A stretch of DNA of 64,000 bases from Ostrea edulis (GCF_947568905.1 NC_079171.1:60574001-60638000); one strand, 5' to 3'; positions 42,432-63,533 are shown, counted from the first letter of the stretch. Notes: generated by a model from the sequence alone, not told the origin. Numbers and translations are program-made.

Positions 42432-45400
42432 ATGACGTCGCTGTTGTTGATTTTCAGTTTCCTGTTCCTCCTCAGCGATAACCGTGCACAATGTAAGCCC
42501 CATCTCTAGTCATAAATCTGAAAATAATCAAAGGGAGAATAAAGTTCATTTTGTTCAATTCTTTTAATCACCTGTAAATAATAACAATTATATACATTTA
42601 TCTGCATATATTTCCAAGTTTAAAACAACTAAAATCTTCAAAATTACGTCCCCTGAGTTTTGGCTTCTTGGACAGCAATTGAATTCGTAATATAAGTTGG
42701 CTCCTTGTAAAGCTTTTAAAATAACAGACACGTGATCATTTAAAAGTTTATGAATATTACTTGTATTCATTTATCTCTTTTATAATGTTACAAAGGAATA
42801 AGATAGTCTGGATGAGAACAAAAAATTTACTAAAAGCTACACATATATACATGTACTAGATACTTAGAAATTCAAACTCTCCTTGATTTAAATTCAAGTC
42901 GTCATGATATCAAAAATTGTGAGGAAGTTTGGAATAGCGCAATGCCTGTTCGATAAAAAAAAAAAAACCGTTTAAATTGTTTAAAAGGCCATGGATACGA
43001 TTTGAGCTGAAAATTTCAAAATTTTATTTTTCCACTTTTATTGCTTAAAATGTTTGAAAAGTTGAATTTTTCTAATGGTTAACCAAAATTTGAATATCTG
43101 TTGAATTACAAGTGAGATACATCGATCACAATTCTTTGTTATGTAAAGAAGGCTGGTGCCGTGTTTTTGTTTACATATACATGTAGATTGCTTTATAGAA
43201 AATAGCATGTTTTAAAACAAAATGAGACTGCCAAACACTAGAAACTATTTAATTGTGTTAAGAATTAACTTTTACATTTAAAAAAAAATCTGCTTTAGCT
43301 TAATTCTGTTTACTTATTTAATCAAAGTATTAATTGATTGGATATTTTTTAACGTCCCGCTAGAGAATTCTTCCCTCATATCTTATATGGAGACGTCACT
43401 AAGACCGGTGGAGGGCTGCAACATTAAGACCTATACTTGGCACTTATGACCTTCGAACAGGGAGGGATCTTTATCGTGCCACACCTGCTGTGACACGTGG
43501 CCTCAGTTTTCGAGGTCTCACCCGAAGGACCGCCCCATTTAGTCGTCTCCTACGATAAACAGGGGGTACTGGGGACCTATTCTAACCCGGATCCCCACGG
43601 GACAACCTATGTTTAGTATTTTGGGCTCTGTATCTCCCATGTGCCTCAACAAATGATATTCAAATTTTTGCTGGCCATTAGAAATACCTTAGTTAAGGAA
43701 TCTAATCATTAAAATAAAATAATAAAATTTGGAAAATTCTCAGCTCATGCCCTTTAAAAGTGGATTTTATGTTTTTATAATTTTTTTATGTTACAGCACA
43801 GCTGTTTTTCCAGAAACTTCAACAAGCGTCTGCAGGAAGCAGATGTATGTCTGGGTCAATAGCATGCTTACCGGCCCCATGGTGTCAAACAGTTAAAGAT
43901 GAAAATGGCTGTCCAAGATGCAAGTGCAACAGTATGCTGTTTATCAATTCATTAAATCATACATGAAATAAGTCGTTGAAGGTTCAAAGTTCAATACATT
44001 AGATCCTCGTACAACCCCTGCACTTAAATGGTAAAACCAACAAAATGGTGCTTTTAAAACATTTTATCTCATATTTTCAAATAATTGGAGACGCTGAGGT
44101 TTTTTTCAGCGGCCATTTTGGTACATAAAGGTCACGTGACTATCTAGAATATTTTTGTAACAAAACTCTGCCAACGGTCAGAGATAACTGGAGGGAAGGA
44201 AAATGTACAGGGGAGGGGCGGGGGGTAAAATAATAGAAGGGGGATAAGAGATGGGAATCCATCCCCGTGTGATACTTGTTCTGCAGAAAGTGATGCATAA
44301 TAATTCAAACACACATGTTACCATGATAAAAGGGCCGCACTATTTCCCTGAGCGCGTGCAGTCGTCATTAAACCAGCGCCATGACAGGTCGATCTAACTC
44401 TGGGGCCTTATCTCCACTTTCTGTTAATCTCCGAAGAATGTGTCTGTATTAAGACATAGCGATAGATTATGGAGAGTTAAATACAGCTTAGTTATACAAC
44501 AGTTTGTCTGGACGTCGACCATTGTCGCCGACTTTATTAATGGATTTAAGATAAACCTTATCTAATGTACTGTCAGAATCCTTTTTCTGTTTGTTTATGT
44601 GCGCAGTGCATCTAAATCGCTATATTTCACTCGAGTAAAAATGTTTACAATGTTTATTGTGAATGACGTTTCATGTCTCTCACGTAATGTTATCATCATT
44701 ATTATTATCATGTTTATTCAGGCAAAGCATCAGATAAATTACAAGTCTTAATCATATATATTGTAAAACACATTAATAATGCCAATTAGGGATCACAAAT
44801 GAATTTTTGGCACATTTTTATCATATGTACGGAATAGCACTCCAGATATTATCACAACTATAGCCACCAACAACATCATTATTAAAATACATGCTTATCA
44901 CAGTACCAGTTCTTATCACAGACAATATAAATTTATACTTGAAATCAATCTTTATCTAGGATAACCCATGAAAGCAATTTATAAATCTTGCTTATTTCCA
45001 ATGGGGTCCTAAGATGTTATAAGTTGATTATAGATTATGTATGACTAAGACAGCATAGACAAAATAATATTGAACGTTGGGTGATTTTCCTAGCCCAAAT
45101 TAAGTAAAATTATGTATATTGTTTGATTATGATATTGATTCAAAATAATTTAAAAAATGTATTATACACCATAAAAAAACATATATAAAGGCTTCCTTCC
45201 CTCCTTCTTCTGCAAGATGCAACTTGACAGCAGATTTAAATCTAGCTCTATTTAAACAAATTTGAACTATTGTAGGCCCTAACCCTAGGAACATGATAAT
45301 TAAAATCGGAGACTCCCCTAGTAGCATTATATTTTCTGTCAAATTTCTCATGTAAATATTTGGTGCACAGAATTCCTCAAATTCTGGAGTCTACTGTACT

Positions 45401-48400
45401 TTCACCGTTATTTATAGAACATAACTTTTGATCTCATTTGAATTTAAGTGTTTAGAGCAACCAATCATATTTTCTTTAGATAGAGAGCCTTTCAGTTTCA
45501 CTGATATACATGTATCAATACGTAATCTGGCATAAAATTTGATTGGAAATTGTCCATTAAATGCAAGCTACCACACGGAGCCGTAATGTTTACTTCCACA
45601 ATGATTACAATTTGTTTACTTCCACAATAATTACAATTTGTTTACTTCCACAATAATTACAATTTGTTTACTTCCAAAATAATTACAATTTGTTTACTTC
45701 CACAATAATTACAATTTGTTTACTTCCACAATAATTACAATTTGTTTACTTCCACAATGATTACAATTTGTTTACTTCCAAAATAATTACACTTTGTTTA
45801 CTTCCACAATAATTACAATTTGTTTATCGCCTGGGATTATTGTTGCTCAACCGAGCACGTGAACAATGCAGCATTATGAATATAATTATTGATATAGGCA
45901 TATAATGACAGTTCTCAGAGTTATCTGAATAATGTTACTCAAAAGGAAGTTTCAGATCATCCAGAGAGACACCTCACGCAGGCGCAATGAGTCCCTTTTC
46001 CACATCTATGTTTGGATCTAATGGTGGTTTCGGCTTTCCCGGATTTCCCAGCTTCAGTGGTAAATTTTGCTTTGAAATATGAGGAGGTGTTGTTTTGCTC
46101 TTTGTTCTGCTATAAATCTTTTATTTCTTCTCAAAGTTGATCTCCCCGTGACAAATGTCACTCTTTTGTCTGATAGTCATTGAAATTTAGAGTTATATCG
46201 ACATGTTCAGGCCAGATGGGACCGATGAATCCGATGGCGGCCATGTTTGGTTCCGGAAGTTCAATGTCCGGAACAGGAAACTCTCCTATGTCTGGGCCGA
46301 TGGGATTTTCTGGGGGTATGTCTTCTATGGGGGGATTCATGGGACAGATGAATCCATTGCTGGGTGCGTCTGCTGGACTGACCAATCAGAAAACACCTAG
46401 CAACAATAAAACTTCGTGTGATCCCGCCCCCTACACGTGTCCGGCCCCGCCCCCATGGTGCCAGCGCATTGTTGATGAGGGAGGATGCACTAAATGCCTG
46501 TGTGGAGAAGGTTGCTATAAATTTTATTCTAGTAGAACAAAAGTTTTACTGCAACGCTTTTCAATTGGTTAATTTAATATTGATTGATTGTATATTGTTT
46601 AACGTCCCTCTCGATAATTTTTTACTCATATGAAGACGTTGGTTGATTTGATAATTTCTAATCTTTATTCTGCGTTCATGAGATGTTTAGTGATATTCTA
46701 TATACTACGCTTTGCAGAGTTGCAGACTTACTATGACAAAATTCAAGGAGTAACAAAAAGCACAACAGCAAAACCCCCCACTGTTACTGTCAACCAAACA
46801 AGATCTACAATGACGCCACAAGCCTCTTCTTCTACCATTACTCCTGTTAAAACCACGCCCATCACCACATTTGCCCCGCCTCTCGGTAAGGCGTGTCTTG
46901 CAAACTTTTTTTGTACACTGGATTGCCGAACTGGATACCGGACGGATTCTGTGGGATGCCCGCTGTGTTCTTGTAATGGCGACAGTTCACTCATCACGCA
47001 AGGTTTATTTTTAACTTTAATTTTTTTTTTAGAGTGCACTAAGCAAAGGGTTTCTTCTCTGTTTACAGTAAAAGTTGGCTTAAATCTTCGTTAGTTGAAC
47101 AATTATGACGTCATGATAAACTCAAGACTGTAATGACTGAACAGATACACTTCCTGTTTGTAACACATCTCGCGTGAACTTCAGCTACCTATTCATAGCT
47201 GATCTCAGTGTAACTCACGTGATAGGGAGAGGGCTGAAATAGTTTTTGCGAATAAAATTATTACAAAATGAAATAATTCACTTGATATATAGTGTATAAA
47301 ATCAATTTTGGAATTTACAAAACTCGCAAAGTGAAAATTGATAATAAAAAAGTGTTGTAGAAAATATAAAAAAATGCCACGCCCCCTCCTCCTCCCCAAC
47401 CAGAATTCCTGGATCTGCCCCTGCTCAGCTATCTATTCATAGTTGATCTCCCTTTCACTTTTTGCGAATAAAATTAGTATAAAATAAAAATAATTCACTT
47501 GGTGATATAGTATATAAAATCAATTTTGGAATTTACAAAACTCGCAAAGCCAAAAATTGATAATAAAAAAGTGTTGTAGAATATATAAAACCACATGACC
47601 CCGAAAAATAAATTCTTCGAATGAAAATTCATTTTCAAAACTCGGACGGCTTTCCGCGTAGTTTGTACTGCAATGACACAGAACAGCTTTGTTAAATCCC
47701 AGTGGTTCAAGGGTGTCAGCTGCACTGGGGATTGTGAAATACATGCAGGCTATAAATACCCAATATCTAGAACTCGCACTGAGGACGCACTGTCCACAAT
47801 TACTTATCATGGAAGAATCTTGACGTAGTGCAAGCTTTTGTAGTGGAAGAAATTTGTTCGTTTGCACTTTTGTACATAGACAAGATTTTGTCGAATGTTA
47901 GAAAATCTTAATCTGGAAATGGAACAAGATTCGGATAGGTGAATGCGGGGTAATTTCTCATGACCTTTAATCAATCTAATAATATACCGTCCTTGACCTT
48001 TGATTATCAATTACAATATAGAGCTTCAGATTATAGCACCCCTGTAAGTGTCTTTCGAATTATATACTAAATACACAAATCCTGTACAACCAAAATGATT
48101 TCAGAAGTCTTCTCTCAGTGACCTTGAACTCGTGAATCAATCTCTGAAAAAAGGGGAAACGATCTTTATGCAATCTTCGGTACACTTTATGCAATCTTCG
48201 GTAATTACTTAGATCGGACAGAAAATGTCTTACACATAAAAATAAACAGGAGCCCATTTCACAATAGGTCTTACGAGTTCATACCAAAAGTACTTTTTCA
48301 ATTCATTTAATGGTGCACTTTTTTTTAAAAGTGTAAAATTGTGGCATATCTAAAGAATAGCAGGCAATGAGTAACTATATAAAACCATATTTTCACAAAT

Positions 48401-63048: not shown

Positions 63049-63130
63049 CATGTAAAGTGACATGGAATCTTGAAAGAAGCGATTCTGTTACGACGCTGTC
63101 AAGCAGGATTACGGAGAGAAGAACGGGAGG

Positions 63131-63533
63131 ATGATTAGAATCGGAGTGGTGTGGTGTATGTTGATAGGTATGCGCTATGAGGGGTGTTACGCATTATCAT
63201 GTAATCGTTTGAGATAGAGTTCACTCTCCCCAAGACAAACAGAAATTATAAATATTCTTTCAAACCAGCGAAATCAGGGTTTTATCCGCTGCTCTGATTT
63301 AAAAGTTCTTTTTCTTTTATTTTGATTCCCCACCATAGAAACGCCATTTTCATTTGGGGACAATATATTTACTTTTTAAAAATGAAATCCGTACACTGCA
63401 GGGGCACATGGGTTTATCTACGACTCTTTTCATTTCGGATGTCGACCCATCACAATGTTCTGCCACTTGTCATGCGCGAACGGATACGAGAAGGACGGCT
63501 CAGGATGTGACATATGTCACTGCAAAGGCGTGG
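63131..63533 (+). CDS. Antistasin-domain secreted protein C, first two exons; probably continues beyond the window
   Basis: 63131-63167 (MIRIGVVWCMLI G|gtatgc) + 63402-63533 (AHG-FIYDSFHFGCRPITMFCHLSCANGYEKDGSGCDICHCKGV G|gtaaga), phase 1; absent from the ORF track in this frame. Confidence 0.85.

What the first reader, a model, noticed from the sequence alone, without database searches (positions are those of the whole stretch)
42432..63533. Tandem cluster of three divergent secreted antistasin-domain genes built from phase-1 domain exons
Eleven 6-Cys domains (4 + 6 + at least 1) are each encoded by one symmetric phase 1-1 exon with its own Thr/Pro/Ser linker, behind separate signal-peptide exons that also end in phase 1. 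Any exon can be skipped, duplicated or spliced across gene borders without frameshift, so it is a ready substrate for exon shuffling and combinatorial isoforms. Paralogues are highly diverged, and most of the structure is invisible in the ORF track.
Basis: partly seen in the sequence, partly recalled or inferred. Interest (0 to 1): 0.7.

Follow-up and report, generated by a model that had tools for sequence, protein, structure and literature searches.

The report
Conserved oyster antistasin-like three-gene cluster
This is a real tandem cluster of three secreted antistasin-like (protease-inhibitor-type) genes built from one-domain exons, but the same cluster is already annotated in other oysters with an unchanged domain order, so it is ordinary.

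Summary
The + strand carries eleven 6-Cys units in the window and two more just past its end. Each sits in its own open stretch, bounded by AG/GT sites in intron phase 1. They form three genes with 4, 6 and 3 domains.

Evidence for the gene models:
- Pfam PF02822 matches 11 of the 13 units, four of them above the cut-off on their own.
- A profile of the units hits only leech antistasin-type inhibitors in the PDB.
- One RNA contig confirms the D9-D10 splice and a poly(A) end for gene B at 62062.
- Annotated orthologues in Magallana gigas, Crassostrea virginica and Saccostrea echinata confirm every gene B junction.
- All three species show the same three genes, followed by the same sugar transporter gene.

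- Gene A has a missed non-domain exon at 45946-46059, also phase 1-1.
- Gene B has two conserved alternative signal peptides: a distal exon, and a start that runs directly into the D5 exon.
- D1 and D2 are only half antistasin-like.

The exon-shuffling and combinatorial-isoform idea is possible by frame arithmetic but is not seen here. Domain order is fixed across four oysters. A 2025 leech paper already describes the modular exon design. I rate this a new member of a known kind, of low interest.

The parts
42432..42492 (+). Gene A exon 0: ATG plus signal peptide MTSLLLIFSFLFLLSDNRAQ. Donor CAAT|gtaagc, ends in phase 1.
   Evidence: Orthologous to the annotated start of the M. gigas 356-aa gene (MKFTLICIVSFIFDFTHQAH, same 61-nt length).
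43797..43931 (+). Gene A exon 1 (135 nt, phase 1-1): divergent 6-Cys unit D1 with a C-LPAPW-C loop.
   Evidence: PF02822 16.9 bits, C-terminal half only; 68% identical to M. gigas.
45946..46059 (+).
   Evidence: It is a 75%-identical island matching M. gigas 7349-7462. Only with this exon does the M. gigas exon sum reach 1071 nt, which equals the annotated 356 aa.
46211..46510 (+). Gene A exon (300 nt, phase 1-1): Met/Gly/Ser-rich low-complexity stretch plus divergent unit D2 (C-PAPPPW-C).
   Evidence: no Pfam hit; 85% identical to M. gigas.
46718..47002 (+). Gene A exon (285 nt, phase 1-1): Thr/Ser/Pro linker plus D3. The donor 47002 is chosen by orthology; 46984 is the alternative.
   Evidence: (27.2 bits, over the cut-off).
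49214..49398 (+). Gene A last exon: linker, D4 and stop (CECIQ*).
   Evidence: 32.5 bits; 74% identical to M. gigas, same C-terminus CECIQ*.
50408..50456 (+). Gene B distal signal exon: MRNLSLFYIGFLLLHN, donor AATG|gtaagg, ends in phase 1.
   Evidence: Homologous to the N-termini of M. gigas X1 (MRKASVFFVGLALLH) and C. virginica X1.
53029..53074 (+). Gene B alternative proximal start: MDNIIVTWVCVLLIS, read straight into the D5 exon. The same bases are the pyrimidine tract and AG of intron 1.
   Evidence: Like the S. echinata N-terminus MDKFVFSWMCILLISG and the M. gigas form MAGS.. (P0048, 28 contigs). In M. gigas this start is also contiguous with the D5 exon in the genome.
53075..53194 (+). 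Gene B exon 1 (120 nt, phase 1-1): D5.
   Evidence: (36.5 bits).
58067..58240 (+). Gene B exon 2 (174 nt, phase 1-1): linker plus D6. Its acceptor is the last unit of a 20-bp tandem array.
   Evidence: 19.4 bits; junctions CKCA|D......NVT|D as in the orthologues.
59856..60041 (+). Gene B exon 3 (186 nt, phase 1-1): linker plus D7, ending ...LIPGLVYTK.
   Evidence: the orthologues read ...VYTK|APST....
61161..61340 (+). Gene B exon 4 (180 nt, phase 1-1): linker plus D8.
   Evidence: (13.1 bits).
61460..61636 (+). Gene B exon 5 (177 nt, phase 1-1): linker plus D9. Reading through the donor gives G then TAG.
   Evidence: the RNA contig covers 61487-61635 and is joined to 61886. (the orthologues read VKPAGSD...; C. 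virginica X2 ends ...YKSG).
61887..62062 (+). Gene B last exon: D10, stop at 62027-62029, AATAAA at 62044 and poly(A) site at 62062.
   Evidence: (X1 record 7 has 0 mismatches and 25 loose A's behind 62062).
63131..63167 (+). Gene C signal exon (37 nt, ends in phase 1): MIRIGVVWCMLI.
   Evidence: plus orthology to the annotated M. gigas start MRSVGAIICLMI|gt. The M. gigas exon lengths 37+135+147+233 give the annotated 183 aa.
63402..63533 (+). Gene C exon 1 (132 nt, phase 1-1): D11. Exons 2 and 3 lie outside the window, at L001 1052-1198 (D12) and L001 2254-2483 (D13 plus stop).
   Evidence: (31.1 bits).

Best explanation
The region holds three tandem, separately transcribed genes for secreted multi-domain antistasin-like proteins (Pfam PF02822; MEROPS family I15 by my own knowledge).

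Gene layout:
- Gene A runs from 42432 to 49398 and has a signal peptide, 4 units and a Met/Gly/Ser-rich disordered stretch. Summed exon lengths give about 359 aa.
- Gene B runs from 50408 or 53029 to 62062 and has 6 units, about 342 aa.
- Gene C runs from 63131 to about 2.5 kb past the window end and has 3 units, about 181 aa.

Each 6-Cys unit corresponds to subdomain 2 (Cys5-Cys10, three disulfides) of the leech antistasin-type inhibitors. That part carries the reactive-site loop, with P1 just after the second Cys.

Each unit and its Thr/Ser/Pro linker is one phase 1-1 exon. This layout is left over from old exon duplications. The cluster is orthologous, gene for gene and domain for domain, to annotated clusters in Magallana gigas, Crassostrea virginica and Saccostrea echinata.

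Inferred function, not shown: extracellular multi-headed protease inhibitors of non-trypsin-like specificity. The P1-equivalent residues are L, P, T, M, S, S, D, V, Q, N, H, P, D and are mostly conserved between oysters.
For: Domains and splice phases.

Family assignment:
- PF02822 hits 10 of the 11 window units at E<1, with D3, D4, D5 and D11 over the 21.2-bit cut-off. D12 scores 15.6 bits.
- Whole orthologous proteins score 58-65 bits.
- A profile of the 13 units hits only guamerin, antistasin, bdellastasin, hirustasin and gigastasin in the PDB. The residue after Cys2 aligns to the residue after the matching Cys in guamerin (Met) and antistasin (Arg); that these are the P1 residues is my own knowledge.

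Transcription: an RNA contig with 0 mismatches joins 61635/6 to 61886/7 and ends in poly(A) at 62062, behind an AATAAA at 62044.

Orthologues:
- They include M. gigas 'antistasin isoform X1' XP_034320651.1, C. virginica 'antistasin-like isoform X1' XP_022304243 and S. echinata LOC133179706.
- Their sequences cross every predicted gene B junction as modelled.

Synteny:
- The three-gene layout, followed by a - strand MFS transporter gene, is present in three other oysters. The window is collinear with it.
- All four species have 13 domains in the same order, and the tree needs only the minimum 12 label changes.
- M. gigas exon sums reproduce the annotated 356 aa and 183 aa exactly.
Against: - RNA support in the window's own species covers only exons B5 and B6. 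It comes from one small run held as contigs. Genes A and C and both gene B starts rest on orthology and annotation in other species.
- No unit has the 4-Cys subdomain 1 of the leech inhibitors.
- No P1-equivalent residue is Arg or Lys. Asp, Gln, Asn and Pro are unusual for canonical inhibitors.
- D1 and D2 align with the canonical units only over their last 12 residues (hhalign probability 79%) and have no PDB match. D2 and D13 have no Pfam hit.
- The AlphaFold model of the D9 exon scores pLDDT 80-91 over the domain but puts a helix across Cys1-Cys3. It found no structural match, so the fold test is inconclusive.
- No inhibition assay exists for these proteins.
Confidence: 0.82

Rival explanations
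1. The genes are real, but the proteins are not protease inhibitors. On this reading they are structural or matrix components, for example of shell, mucus or extracellular matrix, that use the 6-Cys knot as a stable spacer.
For: - The P1-equivalent residues are non-basic and often atypical (D, Q, N, P), yet conserved across oysters.
- Gene A carries a conserved Met/Gly/Ser/Phe-rich low-complexity region, 85% identical to M. gigas.
- Antistasin-like domains occur in Lottia shell-matrix proteins (PMC3374290).
- An 'Antistasin' transcript tracks larval shell formation in C. gigas (PMC5824581). That gene was not mapped to this cluster.
- The D9 model shows a helix where the leech inhibitors have the reactive loop.
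Against: - All sequence relatives with solved structures are inhibitors.
- Guamerin has Met at P1, as D4 does.
- High antistasin-family expression in mussel digestive gland was read as protease control (PMC5549309).
- The structure model rests on a shallow alignment.
Confidence: 0.25
2. This is the reader's reading: the uniform phase-1 design is actively used. Regulated skipping, duplication or cross-gene splicing of domain exons would give a combinatorial set of isoforms, and the locus would be a hot spot of exon shuffling.
For: - All internal exons are phase 1-1 and multiples of 3 nt, so any in-order subset stays in frame.
- The gaps between the genes are only about 1 kb.
- Dreissena LOC127865590 isoform X2 lacks exactly the 60-aa first-domain cassette of X1.
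- C. virginica X2 drops D10.
- Leech 'bplins' show 1-16 repeats of such exons (PMC12131632).
Against: - Four oyster genera keep the same 13 units in the same order with positional orthology, so no shuffling has occurred since their ancestor.
- Gene B has its own poly(A) signal and site.
- The shorter database proteins of 232, 213 and 311 aa are N-terminal truncations starting at internal codons, not cassette skips.
- No chimeric A-B or B-C protein turned up among the homologues.
Confidence: 0.1
3. The units are decayed pseudo-exons or chance cysteine patterns, not expressed genes.
For: Several units score below the Pfam cut-off on their own. The introns carry transposon debris and tandem arrays.
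Against: - All 13 units are open, on one strand and in order, and are 61-91% identical at protein level to M. gigas exons, while the introns do not align.
- There is a spliced, polyadenylated RNA contig.
- The orthologues are annotated and found on transcript-sized contigs.
Confidence: 0.02

Closest known systems
Magallana gigas 'antistasin isoform X1' (XP_034320651.1) with its two neighbours, and the same trios in Crassostrea virginica (XP_022304243) and Saccostrea echinata (LOC133179706)
   Same: - The layout is the same: three + strand genes with 4, 6 and 3 units, followed by a - strand MFS sugar transporter gene.
- Exon junctions, phase-1 signal exons and the dual N-terminus of gene B are all shared.
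- Exon-level protein identity to M. gigas is 61-91%.
   Different: - It is a different species: about 70-84% nucleotide identity in exons, and the introns do not align.
- The introns are larger here. The intron before D6 is 4.9 kb, with a reverse-transcriptase fragment and a 1.6-kb 20-bp array that M. gigas and Saccostrea lack.
Leech antistasin-type inhibitors (antistasin 1SKZ, hirustasin 1BX7, bdellastasin 1C9P, guamerin 3BG4) and the multi-repeat 'bplins' of Hirudinaria bpling (PMC12131632)
   Same: - They share the 6-Cys pattern of subdomain 2 and the conserved G-Y/F...D..GC..C.C motif.
- They are the only PDB sequence matches.
- In leeches Cys5-10 is also one exon that can be joined to another such exon, giving genes with 1-16 repeats, and tandem gene clusters occur.
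   Different: - The oyster units lack the 4-Cys subdomain 1, so they have 6 cysteines, not 10.
- They have no Arg or Lys at the P1-equivalent position.
- They are separated by long Thr/Ser/Pro linkers.
- No anticoagulant role is expected in a filter feeder.
Hydra antistasin and the abalone antistasin-like inhibitor (own knowledge; the abalone protein is cited in PMC5549309, ref. 63)
   Same: They are secreted proteins made of a signal peptide and several 6-Cys/2-Gly antistasin repeats in non-blood-feeding invertebrates.
   Different: I did not compare these sequences here, so the resemblance comes from memory and citation, not from a test. The oyster genes add two divergent 'PxPW' units and a Met/Gly-rich region in gene A.
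Phase 1-1 module exons of extracellular metazoan proteins (exon-shuffling rule; own knowledge)
   Same: One disulfide-rich module per exon, both flanking introns in phase 1, and a signal exon ending in phase 1.
   Different: Here the design is fixed: positional orthology across four oysters shows no recent shuffling.

Membership tests
Antistasin family (Pfam PF02822) | Match to the PF02822 profile above the 21.2-bit gathering score | tested here: met
   Single exons: D5 36.5, D4 32.5, D11 31.1 and D3 27.2 bits are over the cut-off. D6, D7, D10, D9, D1, D12 and D8 score 13-19 bits. D2 and D13 have no hit. The cut-off applies to whole proteins, and the full-length orthologues of gene B score 58-65 bits. 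I did not send the window's own joined proteins to any tool.
Antistasin family (Pfam PF02822) | Six-Cys spacing of subdomain 2: C-x(5-8)-C-x3-C-x(9-11)-C-x2-C-x-C with a G-Y/F and D..GC core | tested here: met
   Met in D3-D13. D1 and D2 have x5-x6 with an invariant P.PW between Cys2 and Cys3, and align only over the last 12 residues. For those two units the feature is only half met.
Leech antistasin-type inhibitors (10-Cys domain) | N-terminal 4-Cys subdomain 1 in front of each 6-Cys subdomain | tested here: not met
   Each exon has exactly six Cys, and the linkers are Cys-free Thr/Ser/Pro stretches.
Leech antistasin-type inhibitors (10-Cys domain) | Basic P1 residue (Arg) after the second Cys of subdomain 2, as in the factor Xa, trypsin and kallikrein inhibitors | tested here: not met
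   The P1-equivalents are L, P, T, M, S, S, D, V, Q, N, H, P, D. Met in D4 matches guamerin.
Leech antistasin-type inhibitors (10-Cys domain) | Fold of subdomain 2 with disulfides 1-4, 2-5 and 3-6 | tested here: inconclusive
   The D9 exon model has pLDDT 80-91 over the domain, but Foldseek found no match and VIA-align gave Z of 2.1 or less. The domain is too small and the alignment too shallow to decide.
Leech antistasin-type inhibitors (10-Cys domain) | Measured inhibition of a serine protease | not testable with these tools
   This needs recombinant protein and enzyme assays.
Secreted proteins | N-terminal signal peptide | tested here: inconclusive
   The N-termini are hydrophobic (best 10-residue Kyte-Doolittle mean 2.3-3.1) and homologous to the annotated orthologue starts. 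No signal-peptide predictor was available.
Phase 1-1 module exons | Each module is bounded by phase-1 introns and its exon length is a multiple of 3 | tested here: met
   All ten internal domain exons and the linker exon meet this. One junction is confirmed by RNA. All gene B junctions are confirmed by the orthologous proteins.
CRIM1 (some scallop relatives are named 'cysteine-rich motor neuron 1 protein-like') | IGFBP and von Willebrand C domains and a transmembrane segment alongside the antistasin-like domains | tested here: not met
   PF02822 is the only Pfam family hit in the orthologues and in the scallop relative P0002. I take the name to be an annotation carry-over.

The most novel reading that the evidence does not exclude
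The uniform phase-1 design may really be used. Domain cassettes could be skipped in a regulated way, and, with only about 1 kb between the genes, transcripts could occasionally read through and splice A-B or B-C exons. That would give chimeric multi-headed proteins from a 13-cassette array. A smaller version of this idea concerns gene B's two conserved signal peptides. One of them is encoded by the pyrimidine tract and AG of intron 1, and the two could mark two promoters with different tissue use.
Probability: 0.08. Interest if true: 0.5.

Novelty: new member of a known kind. Interest (0 to 1): 0.2.

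Why it matters
It matters mainly as annotation. It gives a checked exon-by-exon model of three antistasin-like genes in this oyster. The model includes an exon and an alternative start that a sequence-only reading missed.

It also shows that the cluster is at least as old as the common ancestor of these four oysters and has kept its domain order since. Two points could be worth a bench test:
- The conserved non-basic P1-equivalent residues raise the question of which proteases, if any, these units inhibit. Candidates are host digestive or immune proteases, or parasite proteases.
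- Gene B has two conserved alternative signal peptides.

Neither point changes what is known about the family.

Tried and rejected
1. A first signal-peptide scan with a strict hydrophobicity filter missed the gene A and gene C starts. A looser scan plus orthology fixed this.
2. My crude splice-site scoring ranked the RNA-proven acceptor 61887 only second, so I did not use it as proof.
3. A four-exon enumeration for M. gigas gene C found no solution because the donor range started too late. The correct first exon is 37 nt. That script joined candidate M. gigas exons only to test length and open frame. Nothing joined was printed or searched.
4. The paper search on 'antistasin-like / exon / phase 1' returned only clinical-trial papers.
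5. The shorter cluster members of 232, 213 and 311 aa looked like exon-skipped isoforms. They turned out to be N-terminal truncations beginning at internal codons.
6. The fold search of the D9 model gave nothing usable.
7. The PDB search with the D1/D2 profile was blank.
8. Only one RNA run held any of the stretch, and it covers only exons B5-B6. Splicing of genes A and C in this species therefore stays untested.
9. I sent no joined spliced protein of the window to any search tool. Exons were searched by reference, and full-length orthologues from the databases stood in for the joined models.

Full report
**What is in the sequence.** The window is AT-rich eukaryotic DNA. It lies at G000:C8:60574001-60638000 of an 895-Mb assembly. 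A cysteine-pattern scan of all six frames, followed by an HMM built from the hits, finds eleven 6-Cys units. All are on the + strand between 43.8 and 63.5 kb. Two more lie 1.1 and 2.4 kb past the window end (L001). No other position in 84 kb on either strand reaches E<0.01. The remaining regex hits are (TGTC/TGTT)n low complexity at 51.0-51.5 kb and 37 kb.

**Exon structure.** Each unit sits in a short open stretch. Each has an acceptor that leaves two bases before the first full codon and a donor that leaves one base after the last, which is intron phase 1 on both sides. All internal exon lengths are multiples of three. D4, D10 and D13 run into stop codons and are last exons.

**Family.** PF02822 (Antistasin) hits 10 of the 11 window units at E<1. 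D3, D4, D5 and D11 are above the 21.2-bit cut-off on their own, D12 scores 15.6 bits, and D2 and D13 have no hit. A profile of the 13 units matches only guamerin, antistasin, bdellastasin, hirustasin and gigastasin among 177,635 PDB sequences.

The alignments put the oyster units on the C-terminal 6-Cys part of the leech domains. The residue after the second Cys aligns to Met in guamerin and Arg in antistasin, which are their P1 residues by my own knowledge. The oyster units lack the leech N-terminal 4-Cys subdomain. None has Arg or Lys at the P1-equivalent position.

D1 and D2 form a class of their own. They have an invariant P.PW between Cys2 and Cys3. Only their last 12 residues align with the other units (hhalign probability 79%), and they have no PDB match.

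**Transcript evidence in this species.** Only one small RNA run held part of the stretch. Laid on 58001-64000, its contig 7 matches with no mismatch at 61487-61635 and 61886-62062 and then runs into 25 A's. This proves the D9-D10 splice, which by GT-AG is 61636|61887 in phase 1. It also proves a poly(A) site for gene B at 62062, 18 nt behind an AATAAA. At least this transcript of gene B ends before gene C.

The other three runs hold the introns as well, so they are probably DNA. I could not test genes A and C, or the 5' ends, with reads.

**Orthologues.** The D8 exon, searched against the 50% representatives, gave 30 hits. The best cluster contains M. gigas 'antistasin isoform X1' XP_034320651.1 (348 aa) and C. 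virginica 'antistasin-like isoform X1' XP_022304243 (344 aa), plus transcript-sized contigs. A word search added S. echinata LOC133179706 (355 aa). It also added six-unit relatives in scallops, Pinctada, Dreissena and Ruditapes.

These proteins read across every predicted gene B junction:
- ...CKCA|linker...PC (D5 to D6)
- ...NVT|D (D6 to D7)
- ...VYTK|AP (D7 to D8, which fixes the donor at 60041, not 60011)
- ...|VKPAGSD (D8 to D9, acceptor 61460)
- ...YKS|AGI (D9 to D10), all.

**Two starts of gene B.** M. gigas has two N-terminal forms of the same protein: MRKASVFF... (X1) and MAGSV... (P0048, 52 members on 28 contigs). The window has both.
- A distal exon at 50408-50456 (MRNLSLFYIGFLLLHN, phase 1) resembles the first form.
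- An ATG at 53029 reads without interruption into the D5 exon (MDNIIVTWVCVLLISG-TCEG). It resembles the Saccostrea start MDKFVFSWMCILLISG and the second M. gigas form.

In the M. gigas genome the second form is also contiguous with the D5 exon. The last 46 nt of intron 1, including its pyrimidine tract and AG, therefore double as coding sequence for an alternative signal peptide.

**Synteny and genes A and C.** The genomic places of the three orthologues show the same picture. Three + strand genes with PF02822 hits are followed by a - strand MFS sugar transporter gene:

| Species | Gene A (aa) | Gene B (aa) | Gene C (aa) |
|---|---|---|---|
| M. gigas | 356 | 348 | 183 |
| C. virginica | 359 | 344 | 160 |
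| S. echinata | 359 | 355 | 188 |

The window exons match the M. gigas locus in order at 61-91% protein identity, while the introns do not align. The transporter exons are collinear downstream in L001/L002.

Only with it do the M. gigas exons sum to 1071 nt, the annotated 356 aa.

By the same arithmetic the M. gigas gene C starts with a 37-nt phase-1 exon. Its counterpart here is 63131-63167. Gene C has three units and ends at L001 2483.

**Has anything been shuffled?** All four oysters have exactly 13 units in the same order. In a tree of the 52 units, the 13 positional classes need the minimum possible 12 label changes, against a shuffled mean of 41 and 0 of 200 shuffles as low. Resolution is poor, with only 28 columns.

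The duplications that built the array are therefore older than these oysters' common ancestor. The array has been static since, with most P1-equivalent residues conserved.

The isoforms on record are:
- the alternative first exon of gene B;
- a C. virginica X2 form that ends ...YKSG, which is read-through of the D9 donor into an in-intron stop also present here (TCC G|GT TAG);
- a Dreissena X2 form that lacks exactly the 60-aa first-domain cassette.

The 232-, 213- and 311-aa database entries are truncated calls, not skips. Skipping is possible and happens at least once in a distant relative. I saw no sign of a combinatorial system or of cross-gene splicing.

**Literature.**
- Antistasin-family genes are already named in C. 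gigas larval expression work (PMC5824581).
- They are also reported in the Lottia shell matrix (PMC3374290) and in mussel digestive gland (PMC5549309).
- The Hirudinaria bpling genome paper (PMC12131632) states that Cys5-10 (subdomain 2) is encoded by one exon and that such exons can be joined to one another. It also reports genes with 1-16 repeats, clustered on one scaffold. The modular-exon view is therefore published for the superfamily.

**Mechanism.**
- Shown: three genes, their exon chains (gene B fully; genes A and C by orthology), one splice, one poly(A) site and family membership of most units.
- Inferred: secretion, and action as multi-headed canonical inhibitors whose reactive loop lies between Cys2 and Cys3. 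The targets would be non-trypsin-like proteases.
- The main rival is a non-inhibitory matrix role. It is suggested by the odd conserved P1 residues, by gene A's Met/Gly/Ser-rich region, and by a D9 model with a helix over the loop region. That model found no structural match and is inconclusive.

- I sent no joined spliced protein of the window to any tool. Exons were searched by reference.
- Read laying received 6,000 letters.
- I left the N run at 30702-30862 alone.

**Verdict.** This is a correct and careful observation of an ordinary, conserved gene cluster whose orthologues are already annotated in three other oysters. It is a new member of a known kind, of low interest.

Noticed in passing
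window 56475-58070: A 20-bp unit (ATTTACATTTTAGATCCTAT) is repeated about 77 times, and the array ends exactly in the acceptor of exon B2 (...ATTTACATTTTAG|ATCCCA). The array therefore repeats the acceptor plus the first exon bases. It is absent from the same intron of M. gigas and S. echinata, so it is a recent, species-specific expansion. Another note of the scan (s1-279229) covers it.
   Followed up: partly
L003 18305-19050 (M. gigas, intron after exon C1): A tandem array of 96-99-bp units copies the 3' half of exon C1 with its donor (GSGCDICHCKG|gtgag) about seven times, with some copies decayed. It is a second case in this cluster, in another species, of a minisatellite seeded at a splice junction.
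   Followed up: partly
window 53029-53074 and L003 about 11709-11757: The pyrimidine tract and AG of gene B's first intron also encode the hydrophobic core of an alternative signal peptide. The arrangement is conserved in M. gigas, and an S. echinata N-terminus resembles it.
   Followed up: partly
window 61636-61641: Directly behind the D9 donor the frame reads G then TAG. The C. virginica isoform X2 (295 aa) ends with the same ...YKSG. A five-domain form made by intron read-through or early polyadenylation may therefore be conserved.
   Followed up: partly
window 59401-59800 and 60201-60600; also 55307-55576 (+) versus 59397-59699 (-): Two stretches in gene B introns reach summed contig depths of 10^5-10^7 in the DNA-like runs, so they are very high-copy repeats. 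An ORF-like segment (..GVTGQQGMLTPPRHLIPPL..) occurs in both orientations, about 4 kb apart.
   Followed up: no
window 54575-55087 (+): A 170-aa open frame gives a weak reverse-transcriptase match (PF00078, 18.4 bits). I take it for retroelement debris inside the 4.9-kb intron between D5 and D6.
   Followed up: no
window 59001-59386 and 45587-45826: Two very clean intronic tandem repeats: 43 bp x 9 at 98% identity, and 26 bp x 9 at 95% identity.
   Followed up: no
window 46213-46400 and 45946-46059: Gene A's Met/Gly/Ser/Phe-rich low-complexity region is well conserved with M. gigas: the exon carrying it is 85% identical. That is unusual for a disordered linker and hints at a function of its own.
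   Followed up: no
G000 C8 (3.04, 20.4, 30.85-30.87 and 65.09 Mb) and C5 (53.28 and 93.07 Mb): Further PF02822 hits above the cut-off lie elsewhere in the genome, some in pairs or triplets. The family therefore has several other loci.
   Followed up: no
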